This document shows positions 24,177 through 55,371 of a stretch of DNA of 64,000 bases, piece after piece (position 1 is the stretch's first letter; each line of letters begins with the position of its first letter). Made by a program: the position numbers and the translations under genes. Location: assembly GCF_001194135.2 (NCBI RefSeq), contig NC_068982.1:119851826-119915825 (forward strand). The letters run 5' to 3'. Source of the DNA: Octopus bimaculoides (taxonomy: Eukaryota). The notes below the pieces were generated by a model that worked only from the letters and a program-made list of their open reading frames with translations, had not been told where the DNA came from and did not search any database.

Positions 24177-24412
24177 TATTTCTTTATTGCCCACAAGGGG
24201 CTAAACATAGAGGGGACAAACAAGGACAGACAAAGGGATTAAGTCGATTACATCGACCCAAGTGCGTAAGTGCTACTTAATTTATCGACCCCGAAAGGAT
24301 GAAAGACAAAGTCGACCTCGGCGGAATTTGAACTCAGAACGTAACGGCAGACGAAATACCACTAAGCATTTCGCCCGGCATGCTAACGTTTCTGCCAGCT
24401 CGCCGTCTTTGT
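24176..24412 (-). mobile_element. SINE family B, full length
   Basis: Head cggcgagctggcagaaacgttagc, B-box-like gagttcaaattcc, tail gtcccctctatgtttagccccttgtgggcaataaagaataagaa. Confidence 0.92.
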
Positions 24413-24699
24413 CACCCACATTTTTACGAATATACTGGAAAAGAGCTTTCTTTCTTGACCCTCACATGCCTTTCCAAAATTGCTCTTGAAAAAAATGCCG
24501 TTATGGCTTGGACAAAGAGGAGAATGATTATTGTCAGTCTTTTTAGTTTCTTCCAACGTACAAACTCTTTCACCAAATCCATCCGTCAGCGCGAAAGCGC
24601 TTGGTAAAAGGGGATGCAGCTGTATTTACAGTAGTCACCCTTTATAATTAGATTCGTCACGCGAACATTATTCTGCGAAACACCACAATCTATTAACCT

Positions 24700-24911
24700 T
24701 TTTTCTACTCTAGGCACAAAGCTCATTATTTTGGAAGAGGGAGCCAGTGATTCATTCAACCCCAGTACGCAACTGGTACTTAAATTGTCAACCCCGAAAG
24801 GATGAAAAGCAAAGTTGACCTCGACGAAATTTGAACTCAGAACTTAATGACAAACGAAATACCGCTTAGCATTTCGCCCGACGTGCTAACGTTTCTGCTA
24901 GCTCACGGCCT
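24700..24911 (-). mobile_element. SINE family A, full length with TSD
   Basis: 15-bp TSD accacaat(c/t)tattaa at 24682-24696 and 24913-24927. Confidence 0.92.
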
Positions 24912-26602
24912 TACCACAATTTATTAATACCCTGACACTGAACGCTTGTGTACAGAAAGGTTTGCCTGCCATTTCTCGTCTAATCAGGTTCAATTAACTG
25001 CACTTTCACACCGGTAAAGTTCAGCATTAAGTGGTAATGCCTTTCCAGAACAAAGATTTGTGGAAATTATCCATATTCCCCAGTCAAACACTACGGTATA
25101 ATTTCATTCTCAACGATATGCAGATGTTCTCTAAGAACATCATCAAACCTCCTTTCAATTAAGCCACAATAGATTGCTCACTTCTGTTTTTGCAGAGACA
25201 GGATATACTAAAACGATGAGATGATATACTAAAAATCAGTTCATAGAAGTGTCCATTTAATTTGAATATGGCAGATGATGCTGCAAATTCATCAGTCCAG
25301 ATATTGATATAAGAACCGACATCGATTGCACTGATTACAACCAATAGATAGGGAATATTGGCTCTATCAAAAGCGTACACTCGATCCATACTGATCAGAG
25401 ACCTTTCAATGCGAAGTTACCAGCTTTCAATGCGAAGCTTACACAGGTTCACAGTACCGTATCATATGACACGTAAGCTGCAGTTTATTGACTTTTCTTT
25501 TTTCAGGATTGTGCAGGTTTGAACTTTCCTAACTAAACAGCCTACAGCAAGAGCTAACTGTGTGCTAACATCTTGGCCAAACTCGTAAGTTCTGTGATCA
25601 AAAGAATCAGGGGACTGAAATTATCCTACGAAAACCCCGTTGTTCACATTCTTATTCAGCCCTGTCGCAACTCGCTGGTTCACAAAAGTGAGAATTATTC
25701 CGTTTTACTGCCATTTGTGGTAGGACGGTAGGAATCTCAGCTAAAATATCGGTGAAGAAATCTGATATGAATATGTTAAGTTCATCCAAGCAACGTTATT
25801 TCTCTTCGCAAAAACACATACTGCTCTCCGTATTTCTGCGTCTGTAATTTTATCTTTTATCAGCACTTCGTAACTTCTTCCAAGTATCAGAGGAAGCCAG
25901 CGGCGTAGGTGCTCAAGCCCACTTCAGCCAGTGGTCTATCGTTCCACATAAATAATTCAGCAAAAAGCTGCTGAAAAACTGTACACTTTTGTTTGGAGTA
26001 GAGTACAGTAATATGTCATATTTCATTATATTTCAGCGTATGTGCAGGGAAGATTAGTATACCCACTAGTTCGTCGCTATTTATCATTTCAAAGAAGTAT
26101 ACGGAATCTAGATGCTAATAAATGAAACTGTTACTTTTGTCGAGGGCTGAAGGAAGTCAATTTGGGCCCCTAAAGAAGACAAAGAATAGCTGGCATGTAC
26201 TGAAATGGTCAATTCTCAACATACTTATTACTCAGTTACCTCTAAATATTTGGCAATGTTATTACCAGTTCGAATATGTCAGTGGCAAGTTTGAATTCGT
26301 AAACAAGCTATTCACTGTATTTTGTTATGGGGAAAATTTCTTTCCGTAGACAAGCGGTATAAATATACCTAAATCAGCTCGTGACACCACCTTTCTAGAC
26401 TGTGAGATGCAAGGATTTCGGAGTGGCTTCGAAGAGGACGTTTAACATTTTGGATGTAAGATAAGGATTGGATTGCACTGCATCTAACCTACCTACTACA
26501 TGTGTGAGAATGCGTCGAAACAATTCCAGTGAATTTTAAAGAAAGTCGTTAATTTTATTTACCTATATATCTCATCTACCAGCACTCCATCCGGATCACC
26601 AC

Positions 26603-32131: not shown

Positions 32132-32601
32132 ATTCGTATTCATTTTTTTATAAGTTATAATTTCCTTTCGCAACAAGGAAACAAAGCAGGAAACTCGATA
32201 ACAAAACTGTTACATGTTAAATGTTAGAAATGTCTTACATAGCTATACTGTTCCAGTCTAAAGATTGGGTTTGAAAAATACATGTCAGGAGATGACTTTG
32301 CTTGCCAACACTAAATACCATAAATCTTGTAAGTCTACATAGCGAAGAAGCAACATCCGGAACCAAATGTGGTTTAATTTCATCATTTGTCCTAATCTCA
32401 ACAACACTACAATGTTTAATAATTAACCTAAGGTAAATTTTTAGACACCTTGGATGATTTTATTTTACTCTTTGTTCCGTTACGTTACGTATTTACTGAG
32501 GAACCTATTCGGAATTTTTTTTTTTAAATCACCAAACTTACATGTGTCCATGATACAAAATTTATCATTTCTATTCCTGTGTCAATACTTCTTATATTCA
32601 A

Positions 32602-32820
32602 AGGCGGTGAGCTGCTACAATCGTTAGCACGCCGGGCGAAATGCTTAGCAGTATTTCGTCTGTTTTTACGTTCTGAGTTCTAATTCCGCCGAGGTCAACT
32701 TTGTCTTTCATCCTTTCGGGGTTGATAAATTAAGTACAAGTTGCGTACTGGAGGTCGATCCTATCGACTGGCCCCGCTACAAAAATGTCGGACCGTGTGC
32801 CTAGCGTTGAAAAAAAAGAT
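32602..32820 (+). mobile_element. SINE family A, copy 1 of a tandem pair
   Basis: ggcggtgagctg...gttctgagttctaattccgcc...gtgcctagcgttgaaaa. Confidence 0.92.
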
Positions 32821-32835
32821 ACTTCTTAAATTCAA

Positions 32836-33045
32836 AGGTGGTGAGCTGGCAGAATCGTTAGCACGCCGGGAAAAATGCTTAGCGGTATTTCGTCTGTCTT
32901 TACGTTCTGAGTTCAAATTCCACCGACGTCGAATTTGCCTTTCATTCTTTCGGAGTCGATAACTTAAGTACTAGTTGCGTACTGGGGACGATCTAATCGA
33001 CTAGCCCCCTCCCTATAAAATTCGAGCTTTGAATATAAAAGAATA
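32836..33045 (+). mobile_element. SINE family A, copy 2 of a tandem pair
   Basis: ggtggtgagctggcagaatcgttagc...gagttcaaattcc...aaaagaat. Confidence 0.92.
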
Positions 33046-36349: not shown

Positions 36350-36830
36350 GGCGGCGAGCTGGCAGAAACGTTAGCACGCCGGGCGAAATGCTTAGCGGTA
36401 TTTACGAAAATCCGCCGACATCCACTTTGCCTTTCATCCTTTTGGGGTCGATAAATTAAGTACCAGTTACGCACTGGGGTCGACGTAATCGACTTAATCC
36501 GTTTGTCTGTCTTTGTTTGTCCCCTCTGTNNNNNNNNNNTCATCCTTTTGGGGTCGATAAATTAAGTACCAGTTACGCACTGGGGTCGACGTAATCGACT
36601 TAATCCGTTTGTCTGTCTTTGTTTGTCCCCTCTGTGTGTGGCCCCTTTTGGGCAGTAAAGAAATAAGAATTTCGTCGTCTTTACGTACTGAGTTCAAATT
36701 ACGCCGAGGTCAACTTTTCCTTTCATCCTTCGGGGTCGATAAATTAAGTACCAGTTGCGTACTGGGGTCGATCTAATCGACTGGCCCCCTCTCCCAAAAT
36801 TTCGGGTCTTGTGCCTAGAGTAGAAAATAA
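36350..36830 (+). mobile_element. Composite SINE: head, B body and tail, then the remainder of an A copy
   Basis: B tail ends at 36669; A body runs 36670-36830; TSD aatgtatctatc at 36331 and 36829; includes a 96-bp duplication across a 10-N gap. Confidence 0.9.
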
Positions 36831-37652: not shown

Positions 37653-37697
<45 letters not shown>

Positions 37698-38810
37698 CAT
37701 TCACCCTCAATACATTTCTGATACTGCTATGCTATATTGAATAACGTGTTGTTTCGAAGCTATAAAACTTGAAATAAAATTAAATATAACTACACCTAGA
37801 CTCTGCAAAAGAATTTGCAGAGAACCAATGAAATATGAGTAAATTAACTTAAACGTTGACAGATATTATTAGTTGAACGTGTAATGAAAGATGGCGGTTA
37901 TGAATGTAAGTTACATAGAACAAAATCACATTGGCTAGATAAATCATGGATTATATACATACATACAGAGGACCACACATATACATATGTGTGTGTGTCT
38001 AGGTATGTATGTATATACACGTATATATTTATACATACATACATGTATATATATATATATATATGTGTGTGTGTTGTGTATGTGTGTGTATAAATTCATA
38101 CGTATTTATGAATGTATATGTCTCTTCCTATATATATGTGTGTGTATCTATATATATGTGTGTGTGTATGTGTGCAGATATGCACGCACACATACACACA
38201 CAGACTCATACACATATATATTGAGAGAGAGAGGGAGAGGAGAAGGAGGAGAAGAGAGAGAAGACCAAAAATTATGCTTCAAAATATGAAATATTTTGTT
38301 TATATCTATTTGTTACGTTTTCTTTCTCTCAATATTTTTCTGAAGATAGATTGGTCCTTATGAGAAAGAATGCTTTAATATTTTACTTGTTTTTGTTAGT
38401 TCGTTTTTTCCCCATGTTTTTGCCATTATTTGTATTTATTGATTGTTATGTTGGTTGATATTGTTGCTGACATTGCAGTTAGAGTTATTTTATTTTTCAT
38501 CATGATTTCTGTTTTTCACATGTAAATTCTGACTTTTTATTTGATGCTTGTATTTCCTTGTTATTGTTGTTGTTGCTGTTGTTTTTTATTGTTTTATTGT
38601 GTTTTTTTTTTGTGGTGTCGTTGGTTGCAGCGGTAACGTTATTGCCGATATTATTGTTGTTGTCTCATCGTTTTGTGGTTTGCTTTTATATTTTATTTAA
38701 GAAAAGGAAAGCAAGTAGAAGTCAAGACTGTGTTATGAAAACCGTTCCCAGAACGTTCAAAACTGAGAATATTTGCTTCTGTGACTTTAATAGTTTTTCA
38801 ATATTTTCAG

Positions 38811-38929
38811 TTTCTGAAATTCCGCTAACAATTGAATCCAATGACAGAGAAATTAAAAACGAAAATTTAAATTCTGACAAAGAATACTTTTCGAATATGG
38901 CGTCAAAACTTCTAAGACATCTGTGGTGA
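38811..38929 (+). CDS. Candidate last coding exon (V)SEIPLTIESNDREIKNENLNSDKEYFSNMASKLLRHLW*
   Basis: Strong acceptor tttttcaatattttcag| at 38810; only the phase-1 frame is open; possible 172-nt intron 38926-39097; AATAAA at 39254; no recognised homolog. Confidence 0.3.
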
Positions 38930-39275
38930 ATACAGCAGAGGAAATGGTAGGCTCCAAGCGATTCAACACTACCATATGTATTTGATTACCCGTTAAAGTC
39001 AGTTCACTTCATCTTGTACTGTTAATGCTCTTCAGAAAGCATGATCCTAAAATATTTCATTTAAATCATTTTACATTATATAACTACTTTCTTACAGGTG
39101 AATGGAAAACATTATATCATAATGCAGAATTATTATTGGGACTGTGGCGTTTCTTTGTACAGAAACTATGATAATCGTAACTAGAAAATCGTCATCAAGT
39201 AGAGTGGTAAATAATTCTCCGACCGCAACATTACAAATGTTGTGTCACAGACGAATAAAAAGTAAATCTGATTAG

Positions 39276-39304
39276 TTCTCTCTCTTTCTATCTCTCTATC
39301 TCCC

Positions 39305-39335
<31 letters not shown>

Positions 39336-39365
39336 CCCTCTCTCTCTTTCCTTCTCTCTCCTCTC
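39276..39365. repeat. Degenerate (CT)n microsatellite
   Basis: Read directly from the sequence. Confidence 0.9.
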
Positions 39366-39549
39366 TTGTTGTTTCCCTTTTTCTAACTATTTCTCTTTTT
39401 CTCCCGCTCTTTCTGTCTCTTTCACCATTCCCTTCTCTCTTTACAACTGCTTTCCTCTCCGAACGAAAATTTTCGAACCATGCCTATCTAAACAAGCTCA
39501 TTACTCCCGCTCAAACATCTGCTTTCTTTGTTTCTCATGTCCCATTCCA

Positions 39550-39790
39550 AATAAACCACACTGAACACGTTGACAAATAATTTATTCTAAGTGCTAAGAA
39601 GCTGAGAAACCCGCAAATCCCTAAGTGTTTATTGATGCTTTGCATTAGGCGAGATTGATTTTGATCGTCGCTCTGCTCGATCAAATCTCGCCTAATGCAA
39701 AGCATCAATAAACACTTAGGGATTTGCGGGTTTCTCAGCTTCTTAGCACTTAGAATAAATTATTTGTCAACGTGTTCAGTGTGGTTTATT
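39550..39790. repeat. Perfect 107-bp inverted repeat with a 27-nt spacer
   Basis: 39550-39656 is the exact reverse complement of 39684-39790, compared base by base. Confidence 0.97.
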
Positions 39791-40378
39791 GTATGTAGTA
39801 CTAAGTTATCTATGTCCCTTGATTTTTAGCATTGCAGGGTGTTATCTGAGGGGTGCTTTCTATTGCAGTTCTATGGAAGGATATGACACACATGCATCAA
39901 CCTAACTACAAAAGTTAGAAAGAACGAGAGAGCTTATATGTTCTCAGCCACAACACAGTGGTAAGTTCCACTGAACTCATTATTGTGTTGTGGCTAACTT
40001 AGAATTTCCACACAACAATGTAATCTTCATTAAGATAATCTCAGCCTGATGATTAGATATGTTGATCAATGTTCATTGCATAACAATTGCATCATGTGCT
40101 TCAGCTTTTTACGAAACATATGTAGCGTACATTTTACATGTTCCGCTCACTCAATTTGGATTTTCTGTTCGCATTTTCGCAGTATTAGTTGCTAACAATG
40201 AACTGTATAGAAACTCGCAGCAACTTAGATACCGAGAAAAGTGTGTAACTCTATGCCAATAAATTATTGTTGTTTCTTATCGTATACTGTTCACTTTTTG
40301 TTCTCTATACCAGCCACTTACTGCTTGAAGCTGAGAAACTTCCCACACTCGATTTCCCGAATCATATTTGTATGTGAG

Positions 40379-40439
<61 letters not shown>

Positions 40440-43140
40440 CGTGAACTTATATTTACGCATTTATTTAAATATGGGGTTTATAATGACGAAGAGAAGTATA
40501 CGTATGTATTACTTTCAGAGTAAATGTTATTTATCATTCACTCACCTCTGCACTCCCTCTCATTCACTTCTCTCTTTCTCTATTTTCATACAGCAATATG
40601 TCTCTATGTCGTCATTTCTCTCTTGATCTATTATTATTTCTCTTGTAGAATTTATACCCAGTGCAGGATTGTATACGGTTTTGCTATCAGAGCAAGTAAT
40701 AACCTATTTAATATTACTAACCAATGCATTCGAAAATAGAAGTCATTTTCTGAACACTTTCCGCGCCAAATGTTCTGCAGGATAAAACTTACTGTGTCTA
40801 TCAATTTAAATCGGAACGAAAACCATTGAAGGCAAATCGTTGAAAGCCTCATTAATATCAGTAATGCATAGAGAGGAAGGTGATGTTCTGTAATATATAA
40901 TCATTGTATAGCTTTGTCTTGGAAACCTAAACGAAAGTCTTAGATTTTCCATTTCTGTTTGGAGAAGTTACAATTTAGCCATAAACAACACTACCGGATT
41001 AAGTATCCTATAGTATCCTACCACAAAATAAAACAAGATTTTGACAGTGAAATTTATGACTTCTTTTTTACTCCTTTCATTTTCATTTTTCCCTTTCAGT
41101 TTTGTATTGCCTCAAATGACCTGCAACAATTTCGTTAGTTTGCAATTCAGTGATCCGTTACTGTGTGTTTAATGTCTCCATGTTACAGCACGTTGACTTA
41201 AGAATATTGCCAAAAATCTGTTCTACGAATTTCATTGTGTCAATATACTTTAGTTTACAGAACTATAAGAAATGATTAGTAGATTTACCATTAAATGTTT
41301 CCTGAGATAGACTAGCAACTTGTACATTGAATGTTGAGTATCTCTTAATCGTACTGGATTTATGCCTGCATACATAGCGTCATTACCATTATCGGCAATT
41401 ACTATGTCATAAAATCTTTTTCGAAATGAGTGAGTCCAAAATTTTGAGTCTGTGAATAACAAGTTCTAATCTGTAACTTCTTAGTTTAATCTCAACGAGC
41501 TTTATATAAGGTATCTTGAAACCAAACGTCTTCAATATACAATTTCGTGTAATATTTTCTGCACATTTTGAATATCACATTTCCCATATTTCATAAGTTA
41601 AGTTATGCCATTGATATCGTTCACATCTGACCATATGATTAAGAAGGGATGCATTTCCTCTTGAGTGGTATACTAGCTCTGTAGCCCAGTTCAACAGCAC
41701 TATCTGGCACCCTGAACTTTCGCTTTGTTGAAAGTATTCAGACAAAGTCTCTGTAGCCTGTATTAAAACCAGTGTTCTTCTTCGCTTTCTCCACTAATCT
41801 GCGCGGTCATGTAATAAAGCATCATTGGCGATACCAATCCTCTTAAACCAAGCCTCAAAACCTCAAAACAGAACTTCTTATCGCTCGTCCAGGTTCTTTA
41901 TAATTTCTATTACGTTTCTTTCTAGTACTATTGATGTTTTATAGGAATAGAGTCACTACTATTTAGCAGGTACTTTATTTAATCAACCCTGAAAGAATTA
42001 AATATAGTACACTTTGAAGTCCTTCTCCGAGCAGAAACCAACGGAGTCTTCTTAGTGATATAAGAGGACTTGTTAAGTTCATTAGACAACATATGGGAAG
42101 GGAAACTTTGAACATTTGGTGATAACTAAGGAATTGATGGAAAGAAACGGTGAAAACAGAAAATAATTAATGGATTTACAAGTTGATTAGAGAAAGACCG
42201 GATCAATAACTAAGTAATGAGTGAGGCAGGAAGGGTAGCGATCCATGTTCGTCGATACGTGTACACACAGAACATGAAGTGGGAGGAGGTATCGATGAAC
42301 CTGATAAACACCAGTTACTTTAACTTGCTTCCAATTTTCTTGGGAAGACAATTCACTCCATTTATGCAAATTTGAGGAATCACTAAAGAAATTAAAAGCT
42401 AGATAAAGGTAAACGACCCGAAAGCTAGTATTGTAAAGATTATTAGATTTCGGCAAATTGGTTTAATTCTGTCTATCGTCAAATTTACTGTTAATTACAA
42501 TGTAACATTTTTCGTGCAACCTTTCGCTCTATGAAATGTACAAGACAAATGTTGATGAGCAGAAAATGCATTTTAACAGCGTGGGACGCCTCTTTTTTAA
42601 ACTTATTGAAGAAAAGAAGAAATGCAGTTATGTGATAATGAAAATGAGAATATGAAGTGGGCGAATTTGGCTGAGCAGCACACATTGACATTTAAACTTC
42701 AATTTATTTTGAAATGAATGAAGTATCAACTTCACTCGTGTCAAGGTAGATTGATCGGTTTCATACCATGAGGAAGAGCTGAGGATTGTAAAATTTCTAG
42801 AATGAAGATAAAAGAAAGAAAACATGTATCAGGTGAACTTCGATGTGAGTAAATCTTAGCTGAATAGTTCACAGCATTCGGAGCTCTTGAAAGTTTTGAA
42901 AGAGAAAGAGCTACAGCGAAGGCAATGCGTCTGTCAGTCAGTTCATAGTACATGCCTGTTGAGTTAATCTTTACGAGTCTGATGGAACTTCATTGGGGAT
43001 ATTCAATGTCTGTATATGTAGCAGCAAGAACATCCTAGATTAGAAATTTAATGTGGGTTATACTTGAGATTAGTAGAAAATCAACTGACCTAGTCTTAAA
43101 GAAAAGATACATTTTTGCCAACATCATATGATAGGTGAAG

Positions 43141-43256
<116 letters not shown>

Positions 43257-44274
43257 TATGTTTTTATCACTAGATCTATCATTTACAGAGCCCATACAGA
43301 GAGTGTAGGGGAGTGTAAGTGAATTTGCGAAGGATATAGCTTAAATATGAACTGCACTTGTTATTTTAAGATAAACACTATTTTAAAAAGCAGTGAGTTA
43401 AATTAAAGCGTTCGGTACTTTACTGATTCATTTGTTATCCTTTGTTGTGGCTCATTATTTTTTGTAATTTTCTATTGTGTTTTAAATTTTGCATGATTTA
43501 ATTTTGATGCTGTGCGTCTTCTTATTTTGTATTCAAGCAATTCATGAATTGTTCACTTTTTATTTCCTTTCATTATCAGCTGCTTTTGACATTTGGATTG
43601 GAGATGTGCACGGTTTATTCTGTTATTCATCTGCACTACGAGATAAGAGAAAGAAAAAATTAATGGTTTTACATGTTTGTCGAACTTCATTAGGTTTCAT
43701 TTGTTTTCAGTTTTTTCTCAGAAACTAAGTGACAATCAGAGAAATGTGATTAGAATAAATAACTATTTCTTTATTGGCCACAAGGGTTTAGAATAAATAA
43801 CAAAATCAATTAACAGTTCATAAATCTATAATTTGAAACATGAGTTAAAATGGAACAAATGAATTGTATTAGCTTTTGCTTGAATATTTATAACATGATT
43901 ATATTTTAACTTCATACAGAAAGGTTCTTAAAATTCCAAAACATTCAAAACTGGGAACAATAAAAACATCTCAGAATAATTGATTTGTATAGGGGTATCC
44001 AAGTTTATTCGGTGTTTCATCTCTAACGTGTTAACATAACACAAAAAAATTACTTTCTACGATTTAGCTGTGTTTGCAAAGAAAGTTCCATATGTGGTTT
44101 ATTGCGAAGAAAATTATAGGTAAAATAATTCAGTGGACACAGTATGACAGAAGCGCTATATGTGTCATAATGGTAGATATTAAATGTTATAAAGGATTAA
44201 TTTCTTTGCCAGACTCATACAAACAGCCAACAAAATTTAAGATACATTTAGCAGGTCGTTTTCTGTTTGCATAG

Positions 44275-44367
44275 TTCATAGAAAAGCTTCCAGTTTCACA
44301 AAAGCAAATTTCAGATGCAGTGAAGCTTCCCATTACTATTACCTTCCAGCATTTTAGTGCAATTGCT
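44275..44367 (+). CDS. Candidate 93-nt phase 0-0 exon FIEKLPVSQKQISDAVKLPITITFQHFSAIA
   Basis: Acceptor gtcgttttctgtttgcatag|, donor GCT|GTGAGT; only frame 0 is open; no recognised homolog. Confidence 0.3.
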
Positions 44368-44799
44368 GTGAGTAATGTACTGTCTATTTTAGACACCGAT
44401 AAACCGGAGCGATGAACTTCATTTCTCAACTAAATTCATTTTGATTCACTTACTTTGCTACTGCTGAAAGTAAGTCATAAAGATTTTAGCATATCCTTTC
44501 GTGCTTTATGTAAATTGGGGTGCAGGTTATGTACCTGGTTCATATCACATCTTACAGGGGTCAAAGTGACATTATGATTCTCATTGAGATTTTCACAAAT
44601 CGGATTCGATTATTCAACTTATATGATGATTTTTTTTATACTATCATACGTCCACAAATGTTTAAATTAAAAGTAAAGTCACATGAATAGACCCCTTGTA
44701 TAGTTCCTCTGTACCAAAAATAAGGCAGTTACTTATTTTTGATCGACCGTGCATCAGGGAAAAGCAATGATGACCTCAATAGAATATTCTTAACTCAGA

Positions 44800-45235
44800 A
44801 ATTATTCGAATGTCAAATATATAACCACATACATTGCCAGCGCCCCTGGACTGGCTCTTGTGCGGGTCGCACATTAAATACACCATTTTGAGCGTGGTCG
44901 TTGCCAGTACCGCCTGACTGGCCTTAGTAGGATTTTCGAGCGAGATCGTTGCCAGTACCCCCTGGACTGGCTCCTGTGCAGATAGCACATAAAATACACC
45001 ATTTTGAGCGTGGCCGTTGCCAGTACCGCCTGACTGGCCTTCGTGCGGGTGACACGTAAAAGCACCCACTACACTCTCTGAGTGGTTGGCGTTAGAAAGG
45101 GCATCCAGCTGTAGAAACTCCCAAATCAGATTGGAGGCTGGTGTTGCCATCCGGTTTCACCAGTCCTCAGTCAAATCGTCCAACCCATGCTAGCATGGAC
45201 AGCGGACGTTAAACGATGATGATTATGATGATGAT
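44800..45235 (+). mobile_element. RTE-tailed SINE-like retroposon with internal tandem subrepeats
   Basis: Four gccag(t)...actggc units; 3' end gagtggttggcgttagaaagggcatcc...ccatgctagcatgg...cgttaaac(gat)n; short (GAT)n tails are characteristic of RTE-mobilised elements. Confidence 0.75.
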
Positions 45236-46329
45236 ACATTCACATGTTAAATACACTCAACAGATAGAAAAATTGTCACAACTTCCTATTTCTTTTCTCA
45301 CATAAATTTTAGCAACTTACATGCCTGTAATTTCGCTCGTGGTATATTCGAGTAGGTGCAATTACACTGACTTGTCACTTGATATAGACTTATATGACAT
45401 AAGGATTTTAAGATATATCTATGAAACAGCGTCTTTATGACAGATAAAACATAAAGCATTTACGTCGTAGCAACCAGTACAGAAACCTATGCGTGATCAT
45501 GCGTCTTCATACAAACAGTCGACGAATCTCAATAGTATCAAACTAACTTTTCAAAAGAGACGGACACATTGACTAATATAGTCTAATATGCACTATTTGA
45601 TTAAGTATGAATGGTTATCATAACTGATTTTTAGTTAGATAATAATAACAAAACACAGAATCTTCAGAATTCGCCCAATGTTCCAAAGAGTTGTCTTCAC
45701 TAATTTATTATTAGCAATTAAATTTATATCGAGGAAAAGCCATTTTAAAGATATAACAACAGCACTCAAAGCTGTCATAATCTCTTTTCGCTTATATTTA
45801 AATATGTCAAATATTTCGTCTGACTTTTGTGGCCTAGAACTCTTCTAAATTGATTGAAATTGAGTTACTAGCAATTTTCTATACGCTACAGTAGGTCTTC
45901 TTCTTCTAAGAGAAACTTTAGATTTCAGGGTCTATTGTATCGTTGCTGTCTGTACTTTTGTTACATGTTTTTTTTTTGTTTTAATCGCGATTAGGTTCGA
46001 GTCTTTGTTTTGATTCTATTACTGTATTGTATAGTTAAAATGCCATTGGGTAGAAAATTAAATTAGTGCTCTAATAACCGTTGGGTGTACGTACCTTAAG
46101 GACGGTGAAACAGCCATATTTACAATAAAATCGCTGAAAGAATAGCTTCACAGTCTTTTTACGGTACAGATAAAAATATTGAGAATAAAATCAGAGATCA
46201 CGAGAACACTCTATATTATGAACACGCGCATGAAACAGCTAGAAGCTATTCTGGTCAATGAGTTTAGAACATCATCTAACTCCATGGCACCAGTAAGTCG
46301 CTACTTCAATAATGCGTTATCTAGCTGCA

Positions 46330-47430
46330 AATAGCGCCTACTTTTGTTTCGTCATGTGACCTCATTCCACTCAGCCTTATCTCAGAAATTCGGACTTCTC
46401 TACAACAGGTAGATACTGAAAAACATGTCAGAATTTGAGAACATTGTCAGTTATAAATGTTCAAAACACGCTCCGACGAAACTCACAATACGCTCCCAAT
46501 GAAGAACAAACTCTCATAAGAAGAATCGTAAAGATTCAATATTAAAACATCAAGCATTTAAGATACTACCACCAACAACATCCACATTTAACGGAAAGAA
46601 GGAAGCTTGCATTAAAAAAATATCACCTGCAGACAGCTGGGAAACCTACAGCGACTATCAAAGATTTGCAGAGGAAAACTGGGTAATCCAAAAAAAATCA
46701 GACAGAACCCAAAAGTGTTCAATTCATATGCCAACAAACATAGGACCGTTGTCCCAACCGTTGGGTCCTTGATAGATGATAACAGAATTCTCTGTCATGA
46801 TTCTAAAGAAATGCCAGAAGTACTATAGAAACAATAGTGTTCTTTCCTTACTGATCCCTCTGATATTGACGCAAGGGATGTAAACGAAACCAAACCCCAA
46901 ATATTATCTCTGACATGATATTACTGCTTCATATATCATTGCAACAGTAAAGGAAGTATTATTTTGCTGCCCACTAATGTCCTTAAGGAAAGCAGACACG
47001 AACTTGCAACTCCTCTAACCAACCTCTGGAGAAATTTTTTCGACTCAGACTATGTACCGAAACAGTACTTATCCCAATCTGTCACCCTGGTCTTTAAAAA
47101 GGGAAACAAGTCCCTTGCAGTTAACTATCACCCAATCTCTCTCAACTCCCATATCATCAAAATGTGTCAAACAGTGGTGAGATCAAGTATAACTGGTTTC
47201 ATGGAGAAGCACAACCTCCTACATTTCAGCCAGCGTGGTTTTCACTGCGGCAGGGAGTGCCTAACAAGCGTTTACATCATAACGACGATGCCCTAAAAGC
47301 TTTGATCTCATGTTCAAACTCTGATGTCAAATATATTGACTTCAGCAAAGCGTTCGACAGAGGTGACAACAATATGCTCTTGTCAATATTGTCCAACATT
47401 TGAATCCGTGGTAAACTGCTATTAGAAGAT
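46330..47430 (+). mobile_element. CR1-like LINE fragment (pre-RT and RT motifs 1-3)
   Basis: NPKVFNSYANK...VGSLID; LKESRHELATPL..LWR...VTLVFKKGNKSLAVNYHPISLNSHIIK...QRGFHCGR; YIDFSKAFDR. Confidence 0.85.
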
Positions 47431-47617
47431 AGCTGCGCAATGTGCCGCGCAAGGTGTCGAATTAGAAACCTTAGGGCATGTCTGAAAAGTACCTCATATG
47501 ATAACTTAAAACATGTAATTTAGCTTAGCTCTGATATTTTAGGAACACGAAATAGGTTTTAGATGATATATTCTTTAAAACGCAGAGAAATCTCCAGGCT
47601 TTGTTATTTATTTAGAA

Positions 47618-47760
47618 TCAGCGAAACATATCAAGTAGTATTCAATCATATATCTTTACATTCGGAGTTCTAATGCTGTCGTAGTTAACTTTGCTTTTCA
47701 TTTTACTTGGATCGATAAAGCAAAATGCCAGTCAGATGTTTAGTCAATTTATTTCCTGTT
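47618..47760 (+). mobile_element. Highly diverged SINE family A copy
   Basis: atctttacattcggagttctaatgctgtcgtagttaactttgcttttcatt...gatcgataaa. Confidence 0.55.
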
Positions 47761-47959
47761 ACAAAAATACAATATATCCTGTTTCGTTGCTCTCTCACAA
47801 ATCATCGTTATTACATCATCATTAGTAATTTGCTAATTACGTATTCTTGTTTATCATAGCAGAGTCAACAGTTGCCTCATGGTTATTTCAAAGCAAACCA
47901 TCACATTCTATTAGTCCTATATTTTGTTTTCATAAACATCTTTAGCTTCACCAATGTAG

Positions 47960-47983
47960 GCATCATCATCATCATCGTCGTCG

Positions 47984-48017
<34 letters not shown>

Positions 48018-48230
48018 TATCGTCATCATCACCACCATCATCATCGTCAGTATCATTACCATTATGTTAATTCCGCCCTAGCATAGGCACTAATATAATC
48101 GTAATCATCATCATCTCTAACTTACACCGTTACCATGATCACCATCACCTACAATTTTATCATCATTATTGTCATCTCCATCGTAATCATATCAAATTAG
48201 CAACGTTAAGATACCACAAGGTGATATTGA
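47960..48230. repeat. Degenerate (CAT)n microsatellite
   Basis: Read directly from the sequence. Confidence 0.9.
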
Positions 48231-49984
48231 TGATGCTCAATACAAGAATGATTGCCCAAATTTCTTTAATAATTCTAAGTTTCTTGCAAAATTAATAATG
48301 GCAGTTTTCTGAATATTTTAACGATCTTTCATTAGATGCCAATTTATAATTATTTCTAAAAATTTCGATATTTTTGTTAGCTTTTCTAACACAAAATAAA
48401 TTTCAGACATTTTAAGATTTAATATCAACCTCACTTGATCCTACTACCTGTCGATATTTCCGCTTTCTTTCGATCTGAGCCTGCTCTCTACGTAATGCCA
48501 AAATTACTTATTAGCGTGTGACATATTTTCATTATTAATTTCGCGTTACATCCGACCATTATCCATCTTAAAACTGATGCCCTAGAGTAGTAATGTCCTA
48601 TGGATATTTTATTGCTTGGCCTGAGGGACAACTGACCTGAATTACAACAACTGCTTAAAAGATCATTAGAATTTAAGTCTGGTGGGCATTCTCATATTGA
48701 TGTACATATGTTTCTTACTGACTTACAGAACAAATCTCACTTAAGTTTGCTTCTTCCAAATTGTTTTTTAAACTCTCTTCCTGATACTCATTACATGCTA
48801 ATATTATCAAAGGTAACCAGGTACCCTATACTTTTCCTACAGCTAGATAGGAACACCAGGCAAATACCCTGCAATTATACTGTAATGGTTTCTATAAGGG
48901 AATGGTACATTGAAGATTTCAGTCGCAAAGGACAAGAAAAGGAAGGAATGGTAACGACTGAAAATCTTTTAATAATATGCTTGTTCTGTCATCGGTAAAC
49001 TGTGCTAAATAGCATGTAATATAGTAGGTGCCATACCTAGCATAACTTGAGCAGCTTACAAATGCTGTCGAGCATGGTGATGAAAGAATTCTGACAAACT
49101 AAATGGTTGATTGATTGATTGACTGATCATCTGATCGACCGATTAGTTAAGCAGTCCTAATTACTTAATTTGTTGTCTAGTTAAAACAAAAAATCAAATA
49201 AAATCCGTGCATATGTTTTAATTACCAAAAATTACCAAAATTACACCTCCCAAATTAAGACATCTGCTTCTACACGCGGTTTGACACGAGGAATCTTTTA
49301 AAACTAATACGAAATCGAAACTTGTGGTATATATACACATTTATTTGTCATAAATATTGTTAATCGTTTCCAGACACCATATATTTCACGAAAGTGACCT
49401 TGTTAATTGAACATTATTTAACCCAACCACAAAACCGAAGCATGTGTCATATATGTACTAAATGTTCATTACATAAATGTGTATTATAGATGTGTAACAT
49501 ATACAAAGCATTTTCATATTGTTATGAAAATTGTTGTGCATATTCGAAGTCAAAACACCCAAATATTATGTTAAAACGCATCAGAAAAAAAATGCGTTTC
49601 CTAATTAGTGTACCAATCACAACAGACGACGAAGAAAATTGTGACACTATCCAAATATAAAGTTCTCAAAATAGACATAACAAGAATGTGGACATTGGAA
49701 TGAAAACCACGTGAAGTTTGGGAACAGGTGCCGTCGCAGTGCTTTGCTGCTTTCACCACTTATCGGTATATTCCCGCGTCCGGCCTGGTGACCCGTCGAG
49801 CAGAGTCCCTGTCAGCTTCCTTCTCTGCCAGAGAGACCTCCTCATGAGCCGCCAACCCAGCTGGATACTCAGTGAAGAGAATACAGTAAGCAAGGTCTAA
49901 GAAAATCAAACAACATGGTCAAATAGTCTGCCCCCAAGCACAAAAGTGAGCGAGAGCTAACCGACGGCGAAAGTTGTATTTACT

Positions 49985-51075
49985 CTTAAGAAAACAGTTT
50001 GCGGTGCTATATCAAGGATGCTGTAGAACCTCTACTGGTTCAGATGGGAATATCTCGTATAGTCAGAACAGATACTGAGTTAGGGACAGGGGATCTCAAA
50101 GTAAAAATAAAATGTAAAGAGGACGAAAGTAGATGTAATGGAAAATCATGTACGGACAGTTCGCGGAAGGTATACAGGAATACATATGCCGATGAAAGAT
50201 AACACTGGTTAAGAACGAACGACGTGAAGTCAGTGAGAGAAGCTTTTATCTGTACCACGCAGTAACAAGCACTTGAGATAAATTATACCAAGTGCGGAGT
50301 TGAAAATACAGAAGAAAGTAACAAATGCAGAAAGTATCAATACAGCAGAAAGAAACAAGGTGAGTCTGCATGGCGTATTTTGACTGAATTCACTAAGCTG
50401 TCCGAAAATGAATACAACAGAAGACACGATAATGCCGCAAGAAATATTGATTGGCAAATGTGTGGCAATTATTGATTGAATAGTGCAAAGAAGTGTTATG
50501 GGCAAACCTCAGAAACAATAGTCGAAAATGAAAGGGTAAAGATACTGCAAGATTTGATTATCCAATGTGATCATGAACCTGAACCGGAAAACTGGTTATA
50601 GAGGTTATTTCATACAGAGGCAAAACATGCTTAACCATGGATATCAAATGTTCTGCTGATGACAGAATGTAGGAAAGCGAAGGAAAGCAGGTCAGATGTG
50701 ATGATTTGAAATTAACGATAAAGAGAATGAAGTCATCGGGGAGTGGCACAAGAAATTATAGATGCCACGGATAAGAAAGTATAAGAGATGATATACCAAG
50801 GTAGAAAGTCCCTGAACCAGATGGTGTTCAGAGTTTCAGTCACAAGAATCTCCTAAGTATGCACAGTTATATATGGCCATTTTTAATTGCTTGCATTATA
50901 AACGGAATATCAGAATGGATGACAATGATTGTAGGAGCACTTGGAATGATCAAAAACAGAACTGAAAATTATTTAAGAATTATCCTTGTCTTAGTATTCA
51001 TGCAGAAAGTGCAAAAGATTGTCTTAACTGGTGGTACGTCACATGTTTTAAGAAGAGCATTGTCGTTGCGATTTT
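49985..51075 (+). mobile_element. R4/Dong-like non-LTR element, 3' part (post-RT, CCHC, RLE) with an out-of-order insert
   Basis: YIKDAVEPLL; MYGQF; QALEINY; KCRK; EYNRRHDNAARNIDWQMC; KILQD; IVGALGMIK...QKIVLTG..HVLRRALS. Confidence 0.85.
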
Positions 51076-51639
51076 TTTCCTTTTCTCCCTTTTATTTTCT
51101 GTTTACTATTTTTTTTTTAACTTTTTCTCTCTGTGTTCTCCTTTATCTCTATCACATGGCTTTGTAAATGAACATTCTGGTGTGCTTATGTCAATGAATT
51201 ATGTACGTTTCTCTGCCCTGGGTGTCAGGGAGACACTCGGCAAGAAATGGAAACAGAATTGAAAGAAGATGATAATGAAAATGATAATGTGTTCGCATTA
51301 GACGGAAGAAGAGAGGAATGTTGATAAGGAACAAGTAAAAAAAGAGAAAGGGAGAAAGAAACTGGAATGATTAAAATAAAGTATTTAAGATATATAAAAT
51401 TCGTTGGTTAAAGCAGGTTAGAAAATTCACGAAAGAAGCGAATCTGGTCGCATGTGCTGCCTTTACAAAGACCAAATAGTTTCCACGCTGGTTGTCGTAT
51501 AAAAACAAGAAAAATACCGAGAGAGATGTGATGGAATGAAGAGAAACAAGGACGAATATAATAAACTGTATTGTGCGTATTTTGTGTATCCGGAAAACTA
51601 TTCAATATAAGACTCTCTGTTGCAGACTCAAATGTCATA

Positions 51640-51875
51640 TCCTCATTCCTAAGAAAATTTCTCTAAACAGATGACTGTGACCTCTTTGATCGCTCCCAAG
51701 AAGACACACAACATATTATAGACCCATTTCCAATGCATGCTCTGCGCTAGGCCTGATAATGTCTTATATCAGCCTGCCCAAGGTGGGCTACATTTGAAAA
51801 CAGATATACGAGTGCATGGTTGGAAGCTCGAAGTTGCAGATAGGTTTGTGCATCTTGGCAACAGATTTAGCATAT
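51640..51875 (+). mobile_element. RTE (BovB-like) RT fragment
   Basis: TDDCDL...EDTQHIID (like YADDCDL), then LYQPAQG...IRVHGWKLEVADRFVHLGNRFS. Confidence 0.8.
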
Positions 51876-52699
51876 AATGAAGCATGTGAATGAAATCTCG
51901 TTTCCAAACAGTAAAACCAGTAATGCTTGGAAAAAGGTCAGTTGTCTCAACGTAGTATCTTTACTGACTGTAAAGTGAAGATTTATATTGCTGTCTCTTC
52001 GAGGTCTCTTAAAGATTTTTCTCGTATGGAGTACATATACATAAAAAGTAGTTTCTCCCAGATACAGCACCCGAGCAATATATGCATACAAATGTAAACA
52101 TATGTACGTAAAAATGTAAACACTGCAATATTTCTATACGAAAACTACAAACCTGTGGGCAAAATTTTAAATTTTAAATTACTTATACTTCCATATTTAT
52201 ACAAGACTTCTATATATATGCACATTGCTGTTTCTTCTCGGTCTCTCGCATATACATCAATAATAATTATAACTACGGAAGAAAAATCAACACACGTTCA
52301 TGGGTTCTTTTCAGTTAAAAAAGGAAAGGCTGTAAAAACGTACCCGGAACCGATAACAAAACGAAGCAAATGAGAAAGAACGGTGGACAGATAACCATAA
52401 ATACTATGAAATAGTTGATTCATGATTTACATACGCTCCTACGCAGCACTCCTCTAAAAACATACAGGAATAAACCCATACTACAAATACCCAACAAAAT
52501 TAACAGAGCCTACACCATGTACCATAGAATGCCGATACCCGACAGAAGAACACAACCTGTGCTGCACAAACAACACATGATACAAAAACTAATACAACAG
52601 ATGACTCAAGCCAAACCCCGTAACAAATCATACTGATAGAATACAATACCCCCACCAAACATATCAACCTACCAGCACAAAGGTGCAAAAATGATGCAA

Positions 52700-55290
52700 T
52701 AGAAATTTGCTTGAGAAAATCAGATGTCGAAGATTAATAGTGGTAATAAGGTTGGTAACGAGTGTTACGTTGCCTGAGTTTATGAGAGACAGGAGTTTCC
52801 GAAGAAACTCTAGTGGTAAGAGCGAAAAGGAAGCTGGACCTTTAAGGGAGGGTCTCTCGCTTGGCAGCGGTTCAGTAAAGATGCAGACTGACTCTAGTTC
52901 TTATCCTGGTACGGCATCAGCAGATAATAGAGCAAGGAGGAGGAAGTGGACTCGCGAAGAAAACAGGATAATAATGCAGTGCTACTTAGAAGGTAAACCT
53001 AAAGGAAGGGACTATAGACAACGGATGTTAACATTTTGGGTAGAGAAGAATAATCTGAAGTAACTGCGCAGAGATTTATAGACCAAGCTAATGTTTGGCA
53101 CCAACGACTTAAGTGATTTAAGTAAGGAAAATCAGAAGATTTTAGATGAGTTGCTGGAAGTAATGAGTAAAGAAGTAAAAAGATTCCTAGCATTAAAAGA
53201 CACCAGCAGTAGGAAGCAACTAGAAATACCTTGGAAAAGAAATTCTGTTATCAGCAGGATAGATTCTAAAAATATAGGAAACTCTAACTTAATGATCTAT
53301 GCAGGAAGGTTAGTAGTCAATAGAAGATGAGATATCTCACAGGAAAGATTACAAAATAGCAAATGTGGAAAAGTAGACTACAAAAAAGCGTGAAGACTTC
53401 AAGACAAGATCTGAGTAGAGTAGAATTAGGAAACACAAGAAACGAATCTCCCCTTGAGAAAAGATACTTAGTCAAAGAGAAAGGATTTGAACAGGAATAG
53501 AAGAGTTGATACAGCGTATCGTAACAGTAGCAGGAAAGCTCTCCAAATATCAGAAAAAATAGGTCATTATCAACAGAATAGATTATTTGAGACAGACCAG
53601 AGGAGATTTTATAACTTAAAAAATAGTGGAGAAAGAAATACTGAAGATGACAAAACTAATGTAGAAGAAGCTAGAAAATTCTGGAGTAATACTTGGGATA
53701 AACCAGAAAAACAAAAAGGTTTGAAGAAGACGGCTAGAGGAACGCATGATCTATTATACATAGACAAAGGAGTACTAAATGAAGTAAAAGCTACAAAGAC
53801 AAATCGAACTATAGCATGGATAGATTATAGGAAAGCCTATGACACAATCCCACACACCTTGATAAGTAAATGTTTGAATATATTCGGTATAGCAGACAAC
53901 ATACGAGAGTTAATTAGCTTTAGCAGGAGGAAATGGAAAGTAGATCTCTTACTCAGGTGACACAGTATTCGGAAATGTTAATATCAAAAGAGGAATTTTC
54001 CAAGAGGAATCGTTTTCCCCTTTAATATTTGTCTTATGTTTGATCCCACTCTGTTTAGTATTAAGGAAGGCAAAGGCAGAGTAATGGGAAAATTAACAAT
54101 TTGCTCTACATAGATGATCTGAACCTTTTCAGTAAGACTGAAAAAGAGATAGATTCCTTAATACAGACTGTACGACTGTTCAGCAAAGATATAGGCATGG
54201 AATTTGGCATAGATATGTATGCAATATTAGTCATGAGAAGGGGACAGGTAGTCAACAGCGATGGCATCCATTTACCAGATGGCCAGACAATACAATCATT
54301 GAAAAGAGGTGAGTGTTATAAGTATCTAGGAGTATGAGAATCTGACAGAGTACTAATTATAGAAAACGAAAATTGAGGTGTACTTTAGAAGGTTGAGGAG
54401 GTTAATGAAGTCGAAGCTGTAAATACATGGGCACTATCATTACTAATATACTCAGTAGCTTTTGTAGATTGGCAACAACTGAATTAGTAAAGCTAAACAA
54501 AAGAACTAGGAAAGAATTCAATATGAATAGAGGACTCCACCCAAGATCAGGAGTAGCAAGATTATACTTACCTAGAAATGAAGGGGAAAGAGGATTAATA
54601 TCAGTAGAAGGCTACGTGGAGTTAGCTGGAGTAGGCATAGATTCCTACGTAGGTAATAGTGAAGAAACTTGATTGCAGAAAAGGGCGACAGAGTTGGTTA
54701 GTAGCAGCACAAGATCAAGAATTTAGGACTAATTGGATAAAAAGCCAAAATAGAAAAAAAAACAAGCAGATTCCCAATGTAGGTTATACAAATCAAAAGA
54801 GAAAATGGTTGCTCATACAGTAAGTGAATGTAGCACGCTGGCACAGAAAAAAATACCAGAAAAGACACAACAACCTAGTGAGAGTAATACACTGGGAATT
54901 ATGTAGAAAACAAGGATTTGAACATACTGATAAATGGTATGAGCATGAACCTAATAAAATACTAGAAAGTAATAAATACAAGATTTTGTGGGACTTTAAA
55001 ATTCAGACTGAGAGAATATTAGAAGCTTGAAGACCTGATTTAGTAGTTGTAGACAAAAGGAATAGAACGTGTCAGACAATTGACTTTACAGTCCCAAATT
55101 ATGAAAATAGGAATACCAGATGTATAGAAAAACTAGCAAAGTACCAGGACCTAGCCGTTGAATTACAGAAACTATGGAAAGTGCGGGGAAAATGTATCGT
55201 AGTAGTTATAGGTGCATCGGAAACTATCGCTAAAGATTTGAACAGATGGATGGAGGAAATAGGTATAAAACCTAGTTTGTAACAATCATG
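52700..55290 (+). mobile_element. Near-full-length, frameshifted R4/Dong-like non-LTR retrotransposon
   Basis: Myb-like RRKWTREENRIIMQCY; QQNRLFETDQRRFY; AWIDYRKAYDTIPH; KRGIFQEESFSPL; YIDDLNLF; YKYLGV; ARLYLPRNEGERGL; SQCRLY...HTVSEC; KILWDFKIQT...RPD; KYQDLA; internal deletions near 53705 and 54670. Confidence 0.93.
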
Positions 55291-55298
55291 TATGATGA

Positions 55299-55299
55299 A

Positions 55300-55370: not shown

Positions 55371-55371
<1 letters not shown>

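What the first reader, a model, noticed from the sequence alone, without database searches (positions are those of the whole stretch)
39550..39790. Perfect 107-bp inverted repeat in otherwise decayed DNA
Seen: the arms have no mismatches. The spacer extends the stem by ~7 bp (ttgatcg/cgatcaa) past a small bulge, leaving a 10-nt loop. There is no flanking TSD and I found no other copy in the window. Established: long perfect palindromes are unstable, and long dsRNA is a substrate for Dicer and ADAR; A-to-I editing is extensive in coleoids. Inference: a very recent fold-back duplication, a young MITE, a hairpin-RNA locus kept by selection or conversion, or a library artefact.
Basis: partly seen in the sequence, partly recalled or inferred. 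Interest (0 to 1): 0.7.

Follow-up and report, generated by a model that had tools for sequence, protein, structure and literature searches.

The report
Young perfect hairpin repeat in junk DNA
A 241-base stretch of non-coding DNA is folded back on itself almost perfectly, most likely a recent copying accident during DNA repair or replication, and nothing available here shows that it has a function.

Summary
Arms 39550-39656 and 39684-39790 are 107 nt and 100% complementary. The 27-nt spacer adds a 6-bp inner stem (TGATCG/CGATCA), a 5-nt bulge (GATTT) and a 10-nt loop. There is no second copy in the window and no non-palindromic target-site duplication.

The palindrome lies in TE-rich, decayed, non-coding DNA of a short-read scaffold, 1.9 kb and 17.7 kb from the nearest gaps. 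I found no adapter at its centre, no Rfam family, no protein domain within about 6 kb, and no match to a plasmid, phage, prokaryote, viral or metagenome collection.

Zero differences over 107 bp bound arm divergence at 2.8% or less (95%). Other repeats in the window are 9-23% diverged.

My best reading (about 0.4) is a real, young fold-back inverted duplication seeded at a short hairpin, and neutral. The rivals are a palindromic MITE whose TA duplication is hidden inside the arms (about 0.25), an assembly or gap-closure artefact (about 0.17), a selected hairpin-RNA locus (about 0.07), and an older repeat homogenised by gene conversion (about 0.06).

Genome-wide copy number, read support, transcription and the source organism could not be tested, because no eukaryotic genome or read data were reachable. 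"Coleoid" is unverified. Interest is low to moderate.

The parts
39550..39656 (.). Left arm of the palindrome (107 nt, 36% G+C, 3 CpG)
   Evidence: identical to the reverse complement of 39684-39790
39657..39661 (.). 5-nt asymmetry (GATTT) with no partner on the right side. It appears as a bulge in the hairpin and is the only departure from symmetry outside the loop.
   Evidence: Its placement is ambiguous by 2-3 nt because of flanking A/T runs.
39662..39667 (.). Inner stem, left half (TGATCG)
   Evidence: A flush stem of this kind arises in 0.7% of random spacers.
39668..39677 (.). 10-nt loop (TCGCTCTGCT), the centre of symmetry and the presumed turn-around point of fold-back synthesis
   Evidence: No significant similarity to sequencing adapters.
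39678..39683 (.). Inner stem, right half (CGATCA), directly abutting the right arm
39684..39790 (.). Right arm of the palindrome (107 nt)

Best explanation
This is a real and evolutionarily very young fold-back (inverted) duplication of about 113-118 bp of ordinary non-coding DNA.

Inferred mechanism: at a DNA break or a stalled fork, a 3' single-stranded end carrying a short natural inverted repeat (TGATCG-N10-CGATCA) snapped back on itself. It primed DNA synthesis that copied the strand it had just come from for about 110 nt. Synthesis then left the template and the end was rejoined to the downstream sequence (GTATG...). The 5-nt asymmetry next to the inner stem is either a mis-registered priming step or one later small indel. 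That kind of central change makes palindromes more stable.

The element is most likely neutral and transient. If the region is transcribed, either strand would fold into a 113-bp double-stranded RNA hairpin. That would be an ordinary substrate for ADAR hyper-editing, and for Dicer where such a pathway exists, but this is a by-product and not a demonstrated function.

What is shown: the structure, its uniqueness in the window, its youth relative to neighbouring repeats, and the absence of TE or coding hallmarks.

What is inferred: the mechanism, its neutrality, and that the assembly is correct at this point.
For: - The arms are 107/107 identical.
- Symmetry continues through a 6-bp inner stem to a 10-nt loop. 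Only 0.7% of random 27-nt spacers give this, so the duplication turns round at a small hairpin.
- Yeast fold-back inversions use single-stranded DNA hairpins with 4-15-bp stems, many with loops under 15 nt (PMC7467729, read).
- Zero differences bound arm divergence at 2.8% or less (95%). Other repeats in the window are 77-91% identical, and the TE coding remnants are frameshifted.
- There is no TSD other than trivially palindromic AT/TA.
- There is no second copy in 64 kb, although a SINE-like family has about 10 copies there.
- The arm shows no similarity to the end of the one DNA-transposon remnant in the window.
- Both flanks are distinct unique sequence inside a 19.8-kb gap-free stretch.
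- No protein domains occur within about 6 kb.
Against: - The 5-nt bulge is not predicted by a simple one-step snap-back and needs an extra event.
- There is no microhomology at the outer right junction (TTTATT|GTATG) that would mark the return switch.
- Templated fold-back insertions over 100 nt are, to my knowledge, at the long end of what is reported for polymerase-theta-type repair.
- I could not see an empty or ancestral allele, so which arm is the original is unknown.
- Genome-wide copy number is untested, so a TE origin is not excluded.
- No read-level evidence was available, so an assembly error is not excluded.
Confidence: 0.4

Rival explanations
1. It is a young copy of a palindromic non-autonomous DNA transposon (a MITE or foldback-type element, like MADE1 but longer). 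It would consist of two long identical terminal inverted repeats joined by a short centre. It would have inserted at a TA, and that duplication is hidden because TA is its own reverse complement.
For: - TA lies at 39552-39553 and 39787-39788, just inside the arm ends, in an AATA...TATT context.
- A mariner-type transposase once lived in this genome (remnant at about 3300-4170, SETMAR/Mos1 E about 1e-15).
- The size (233-241 bp), the A+T richness and the lack of coding capacity fit a MITE.
- An octopus repeat survey lists recently active Tc1-Mariner elements and MITE families (PMC13282606). This is relevant only if the host is related.
- Absence of a second copy in 64 kb says little for a family of moderate copy number.
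Against: - No non-trivial TSD is present.
- The sequence after the putative TA (AACCACAC...) is not a canonical Tc1/mariner end and does not resemble the end of the mariner remnant in the window.
- Recent insertion does not by itself make the two arms identical. The family consensus would also have to be a perfect 107-bp palindrome.
- A short-read assembly that breaks at every microsatellite runs straight through this element. That argues against a high-copy, near-identical family (inference).
- No related sequence turned up in any collection searched, although those collections hardly cover eukaryotes.
Confidence: 0.25
2. It is an assembly or gap-closure artefact: the genome carries one arm only, or the two arms lie at different loci.
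For: - The window is a scaffolded short-read draft with 12 N-gaps (4,934 N), and its contigs break at simple repeats.
- A 107-bp perfect inverted repeat is longer than usual k-mers. It therefore had to be resolved by pairing or gap filling, steps that can err.
- Palindromic chimeras are a known by-product of some library methods (PMC6218980, abstract seen).
Against: - It is not at a contig end or gap (1,898 bp and 17,696 bp away).
- The centre carries no adapter or linker. The best TruSeq score is matched by 4% of random windows, and 8 adapters were tried.
- A snap-back chimera would continue into the reverse complement of the left flank. Here the right flank is different, unique sequence.
- The 5-nt asymmetry and the 10-nt loop are not what a graph turn-back produces.
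- No other such structure occurs in the window.
Confidence: 0.17
3. It is a functional hairpin-RNA gene (an endo-siRNA or proto-microRNA precursor, or an ADAR-binding dsRNA) whose stem is kept perfect by selection.
For: - Either strand folds into a 113-bp stem with z about -29 to -30.
- Generic microRNA-precursor models respond to the shape.
- New hairpin-RNA genes are known to arise by inverted duplication (PMC3237417, title and abstract seen).
- Long near-perfect dsRNAs are the main ADAR hyper-editing targets across animals, octopus being extreme (PMC5625713).
Against: - All Rfam hits are far below the gathering scores (for example 52 against 245 bits). They reflect the hairpin shape, not homology.
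- Selection on a stem tolerates G-U pairs and compensatory changes, so absolute identity points to youth and not to constraint.
- No homologue of the arm was found at the protein level, so no target gene is evident.
- A mollusc-wide survey found no dedicated endo-siRNA pathway (PMC12479628).
- No transcription or conservation data exist here.
Confidence: 0.07
4. It is an older inverted repeat whose arms are kept identical by intrachromosomal gene conversion.
For: Arm-to-arm conversion is well established for large palindromes (established knowledge, from memory: human Y-chromosome palindromes and plastid inverted repeats). Zero substitutions alongside one indel at the centre is compatible with this.
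Against: Arms of 107 bp are short for efficient conversion (established knowledge). Youth explains the data with fewer assumptions. Orthologues could not be examined.
Confidence: 0.06

Closest known systems
Hairpin-primed fold-back inversions and snap-back templated insertions at DNA breaks or stalled forks (for example yeast fold-back inversions, PMC7467729)
   Same: An inverted copy lies directly next to its template. The turn-around is at a short inverted repeat (6-bp stem, 10-nt loop, within the 4-15-bp stems and the under-15-nt 'short-loop' class described). There is no TSD and the event is single-copy.
   Different: The described yeast and human events are chromosome-scale and need secondary rearrangements. 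This one is a 113-bp local event healed back into the same chromosome. It also has a 5-nt skip beside the stem that the simple model does not predict.
Palindromic MITEs such as human MADE1 (80 bp, Hsmar1-derived, source of miR-548; from memory) and the palindromic Harbinger repeat of Xenopus (PMC5625713)
   Same: Short, non-coding and A+T-rich, and almost the whole element is a hairpin. If transcribed it forms dsRNA that can be edited or diced. A TA duplication would be hidden in the palindrome.
   Different: No second copy, no recognisable transposon terminus and no demonstrable TSD. The arms (107-113 bp) are far longer than mariner TIRs (about 30 bp) and carry no mismatches at all.
Hairpin-RNA (hpRNA) endo-siRNA loci of Drosophila and young plant MIR genes formed by inverted duplication (PMC3237417)
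   Same: A long, near-perfect intramolecular stem created by inverted duplication.
   Different: Those loci are defined by transcription, small-RNA production and homology of the arms to a target gene. None of these is shown here, and the pathway may be absent in molluscs (PMC12479628).
Artificial palindromes from library preparation or whole-genome amplification (PMC6218980)
   Same: Perfect arms with a short turn-around.
   Different: Such chimeras are individual molecules whose second arm runs on into the reverse complement of the first flank. Here the two flanks differ and are embedded in a long contig.

Membership tests
MITE (Tc1/mariner-type, palindromic) | Terminal inverted repeats | tested here: met
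   The arms are perfect inverted repeats. This is trivially met by any palindrome.
MITE (Tc1/mariner-type, palindromic) | Target-site duplication flanking the TIRs (TA) | tested here: inconclusive
   Only AT or TA inside the arm ends fit. Being self-complementary, they cannot be told apart from arm sequence. No TSD of 3-12 bp was found. The 7-mer ATGTCCC in both flanks is not flush with the arms and is at chance level (5.8%).
MITE (Tc1/mariner-type, palindromic) | Multiple dispersed copies in the genome | not testable with these tools
   One copy in the 64-kb window. No eukaryotic genome collection was reachable. The arm is absent from the metagenome, viral and prokaryote collections and from the protein collections.
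MITE (Tc1/mariner-type, palindromic) | Termini shared with an autonomous transposon | tested here: not met
   The arm against the 3' end of the only transposase-bearing remnant in the window scores 11, against a null mean of 11.4. Other potential partners in the genome were not testable.
Fold-back / snap-back inverted duplication | Inverted copy immediately adjacent to its template, turning at a short hairpin (stem 4-15 bp, short loop) | tested here: met
   6-bp stem and 10-nt loop at the centre. P = 0.007 under a random spacer. Criteria taken from PMC7467729.
Fold-back / snap-back inverted duplication | Ancestral or empty allele retains one arm and the loop | not testable with these tools
   No orthologous or allelic sequence is available.
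microRNA precursor families (Rfam) | Covariance-model score at or above the family's gathering threshold | tested here: not met
   The best hit is MIR2646 at 52 bits against 245. All others are also below threshold, and there are no gathering-level hits in the whole window.
hpRNA / endo-siRNA locus | Transcription and 21-22-nt small RNAs from the stem | not testable with these tools
   No expression data are available.
hpRNA / endo-siRNA locus | Arms homologous to a target gene | tested here: inconclusive
   The ORF across the arm has no homologue. The single hit among 1.84 billion representatives is a translated tandem repeat at 29% identity and is spurious. This was a protein-level search in one frame only.
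Assembly or library artefact | Adapter or linker at the centre, position at a contig end or gap, or second flank equal to the reverse complement of the first | tested here: not met
   No adapter. The palindrome is 1.9 kb and 17.7 kb from gaps. The flanks are unrelated.
Assembly or library artefact | Lack of spanning reads | not testable with these tools
   No read data are available.

The most novel reading that the evidence does not exclude
The hairpin is the founding or currently active copy of a palindromic mobile element, or a newborn hairpin-RNA gene. It would be transcribed into a 113-bp perfect dsRNA that feeds ADAR hyper-editing or small-RNA production in an animal lineage where dsRNA handling is unusual. 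That would catch the birth of a regulatory hairpin in the act.
Probability: 0.07. Interest if true: 0.55.

Novelty: new member of a known kind. Interest (0 to 1): 0.25.

Why it matters
If real, it is a clean natural example of a very recent hairpin-primed inverted duplication. That is the raw material from which palindromic MITEs, hairpin-RNA genes and ADAR-edited dsRNAs are thought to arise, and it is also a potential fragile site. It would be mildly useful as a marker of recent repair or replication errors, and as a test locus for dsRNA editing if it is transcribed. On its own, as a single unreplicated locus in a draft assembly, it does not open a new question.

Tried and rejected
1. Copy number and independent sequence of the locus.
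   - Ten ORFs within about 1 kb of the palindrome were looked up by exact sequence, and none is in the protein collection.
   - The 57-aa ORF over the palindrome has no word-sharing candidate among 5.8 billion clusters.
   - The 74-aa open frame searched against 1.84 billion representatives gave only P0003. That is a translated roughly 65-aa tandem repeat matching at about 29% in three stretches, and I rejected it as spurious.
   - Two arm pieces (29 and 26 nt) are absent from the metagenome and prokaryote-genome collections, and the 29-mer is also absent from viral contigs.
   - These collections hold almost no animal DNA, so the negatives say little.

2. Identifying the organism.
   - ORF 60863-61546 hit only a Logan contig (SRR11869390/1, 44% identity). 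That gene had been called with TGA read as Trp.
   - The RT ORF at 53472-53957 hit only an ENA contig (ERZ25067901, 57% identity).
   - A literature search for the run accession found nothing relevant.
   - The organism remains unknown.

3. Rfam. There were no gathering-level hits. At E-value level only generic hairpin matches appeared.

4. Adapter or linker at the centre. The TruSeq resemblance (CGTCGCTCTGCTCGATC against CGACGCTCTTCCGATC) is not significant.

5. Vector, plasmid or phage origin: no match.

6. Derivation from the mariner remnant in the window: no similarity.

7. A 7-bp direct repeat (ATGTCCC) in both flanks as a TSD: it is not flush with the arms and is at chance level.

8. A parvovirus-like terminal hairpin or part of an autonomous element: no protein domain among the ORFs of 50 aa or more scanned across 33.7-46.3 kb.

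9. The published octopus "dsRNA potential" figure (0.44% of loci) as an expectation. In this window that measure is made up entirely of (AT)n microsatellites apart from this palindrome, so it is not a fair base rate.

Full report
**Observation**

The repeat finder reports arms 39550-39656 and 39684-39790, 107 nt, 100% complementary, 27 nt apart. A direct string comparison confirms identity. Symmetry stops at 39549 (A) against 39791 (G).

The spacer reads as follows:
- GATTT (39657-39661)
- TGATCG (39662-39667)
- TCGCTCTGCT (39668-39677)
- CGATCA (39678-39683)

The hairpin therefore continues past a 5-nt bulge for 6 more base pairs to a 10-nt loop. Either strand folds as RNA at about -199 to -202 kcal/mol, against about -59 for shuffles (z about -29 to -30). 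As DNA it folds at -138 kcal/mol (z = -34).

The inner stem is itself unlikely to be accidental. Only 0.7% of random 27-mers of this composition give a flush stem of 6 bp or more with a bulge of 8 nt or less. The true anatomy is therefore a palindrome of about 113 bp per side reaching a 10-nt loop, with one 5-nt indel and no substitutions.

**Context**

The window is a eukaryotic short-read scaffold. It has 12 runs of N (4,934 bases), nearly all flanked by microsatellites. The palindrome lies inside a 19.8-kb gap-free stretch (37653-57485), 1,898 bp from the upstream gap and 17,696 bp from the downstream gap.

The surroundings are non-coding and repeat-rich:
- A frameshifted mariner transposase remnant lies at about 3300-4170 on the minus strand (SETMAR/Mos1, E about 1e-15).
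- Weak reverse-transcriptase fragments lie around 53.5-54.3 kb.
- A SINE-like family has about ten copies at 77-91% identity.
- Of the ORFs of 50 aa or more scanned across 33.7-46.3 kb, none has a Pfam domain beyond one chance-level hit.
- There are no tRNA genes and no Rfam family at gathering level.

Apart from (AT)n and similar microsatellites, this is the only close, near-perfect inverted repeat in the window. No second copy of the arm or of either flank exists in the window, even at word size 7. "Otherwise decayed DNA" is a fair description.

**How young it is**

Zero differences in 107 aligned positions give a 95% upper bound of 2.8% on arm-to-arm divergence, with a median expectation of about 0.6%. 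That is much younger than the other repeats here, which are 9-23% diverged. It does not require selection or gene conversion. Any event within the last 1-1.5% of lineage divergence would look like this.

**Is it an artefact?**

I could not see reads, so this stays open, but the testable hallmarks are absent.
- The centre carries no adapter or linker. The best resemblance is to the TruSeq stem, and 4% of random windows match as well, with eight adapters tried.
- The element is not at a contig end.
- A snap-back chimeric molecule would run from the second arm into the reverse complement of the first flank. Here the right flank is different, unique sequence that continues for 17.7 kb.
- There is no plasmid or phage similarity.

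A k-mer-based assembly needs reads for both outer junctions and for the centre. The palindromic centre and both orientations of the arm are therefore probably present in the genome. This is an inference. A gap-closure error remains possible, at about 0.17.

**Is it a transposon?**

The only direct repeats that abut a symmetric boundary are AT (39551-2 / 39788-9) and TA (39552-3 / 39787-8). Both are self-complementary, so a Tc1/mariner TA duplication would be swallowed by the palindrome. A mariner-type transposase did once exist in this genome.

Against a MITE:
- The sequence inside the putative TA (AACCACAC...) is not a canonical terminus. It does not resemble the end of the mariner remnant (score 11 against a null mean of 11.4).
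- No TSD of 3-12 bp exists. A shared 7-mer in the flanks is not flush with the arms and is at chance level (5.8%).
- Recent insertion alone does not make the two arms identical. The family consensus would also have to be a perfect 107-bp palindrome.
- An assembler that breaks at every microsatellite ran through this element, which argues against a high-copy, near-identical family (inference).

Copy number in the source genome is the decisive test, and it could not be run. None of the reachable collections contains animal genomes in any systematic way, and every proxy came back empty.

**Is it an RNA gene?**

At E-value level Rfam returns only generic microRNA-precursor matches far below threshold (MIR2646 at 52 bits against 245, MIR6297 at 40 against 114, and so on). 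They respond to the hairpin shape, not to homology.

Selection for a stem tolerates G-U pairs and compensatory changes, so absolute identity speaks for youth and not for constraint. The arm has no detectable homologue that could be a target gene.

If the host is a mollusc, a clade-wide survey that included Octopus bimaculoides found no dedicated endo-siRNA pathway and suggested editing as the fate of long dsRNA (PMC12479628). Long, nearly perfect dsRNAs, including repeats that are themselves palindromes, are already known as the main hyper-editing substrates across Metazoa, with octopus at the extreme (PMC5625713). If the locus is transcribed, editing of this hairpin would be expected, but that would be an ordinary by-product.

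The premise that the host is a coleoid could not be verified. The two informative ORFs hit only an unnamed Logan read set and an unnamed ENA assembly at 44-57% identity.

**Best explanation**

The geometry is an inverted copy abutting its template, turning round at a 6-bp stem with a 10-nt loop. There is no TSD and only a single copy. This matches hairpin-primed fold-back synthesis.

In yeast, fold-back inversions arise when resected 3' single-stranded DNA forms hairpins with 4-15-bp stems, many with loops under 15 nt, and the 3' end is then extended (PMC7467729). I propose the same chemistry on a small scale. The steps would be snap-back at TGATCG-N10-CGATCA, about 110 nt of synthesis, then release and rejoining to the downstream sequence.

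Three points weaken this reading:
- The 5-nt asymmetry needs one extra step, either mis-registered priming in the A/T run or a later microhomology-flanked indel.
- No microhomology is visible at the outer right junction.
- 110 nt is long for such events.

I put this reading at about 0.4. The rivals are a MITE at about 0.25, an artefact at about 0.17, a selected hairpin-RNA locus at about 0.07, and conversion-maintained older arms at about 0.06.

**Comparison, novelty and score**

The element works like a fold-back duplication, and it would behave like a palindromic MITE or an hpRNA precursor if transcribed. Membership in the MITE, hpRNA or microRNA families is not established. The defining features were either not met (Rfam thresholds, transposon termini) or not testable (copy number, small RNAs). 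It is a new member of a known kind.

A specialist would not be surprised by one young perfect inverted repeat in a repeat-rich invertebrate-like genome. I score interest at 0.25. The most novel reading still allowed is a newborn, active palindromic element or hairpin-RNA gene, at about 0.07 probability and about 0.55 interest if true.

Noticed in passing
window 16899-17105, 23996-24411, 24699-24912, 32599-33031, 36407-36827: A SINE-like repeat family of about 120-210 bp has roughly ten copies, several in short tandem arrays, at 77-91% pairwise identity in both orientations. ARAGORN finds no tRNA-like head. The 10-N gap at 36530-36539 sits between two tandem copies.
   Followed up: partly
window ~3300-4170 (minus strand): A decayed mariner-type transposase remnant. 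The 90-aa piece at 3448-3717 matches the SETMAR and Mos1 catalytic domains at E about 1e-15. It carries several frameshifts and stops and is truncated at its 5' side by a microsatellite. The Pfam scan of the same piece returned nothing at E <= 0.01, which I did not resolve.
   Followed up: partly
window 46919-47400, 52695-55279, 2411-2890 (plus strand): Fragments of retroelement ORFs spread over several frames. There are weak RVT_1 hits at 53487-53960 and 54065-54334. The nearest database relative is an unnamed ENA contig at 57% identity.
   Followed up: partly
window 60863-61546 (plus strand): An intact 227-aa ATG-to-stop ORF with no Pfam domain. Its only homologue (44% identity over 40% of the query) is on Logan contigs from SRR11869390/1, where the gene was called with TGA read as Trp. 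It may be a retroelement ORF1/Gag-like protein.
   Followed up: partly
window 39946-39995: A small second hairpin lies 155 bp downstream of the palindrome. It has 23-nt arms, 83% complementary, 4 nt apart (AGCCACAACAC.../...GTGTTGTGGCT). Only sub-threshold Rfam hits were found.
   Followed up: no
window 39277-39445 and 39464-39475: An imperfect TC-rich low-complexity tract of about 170 bp ends about 100 bp upstream of the palindrome. A perfect 12-bp palindrome, CGAAAATTTTCG, lies between them.
   Followed up: no
window N-runs at 724, 9420, 10988, 12961, 16159, 18073, 26674, 31984, 37553, 57486: Almost every assembly gap is bordered by (AT)n, (GT)n, (TC)n or (AAT)n, so contigs end at microsatellites. 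Two gaps are exactly 10 N and one is exactly 100 N, which suggests more than one scaffolding stage.
   Followed up: yes
window 44779-45156 (minus strand): A 126-aa open frame contains an internal repeat (…KASQAVLAT..TLKMVY… occurs twice). It has no Pfam hit and is probably a translated tandem or SINE-type repeat.
   Followed up: no
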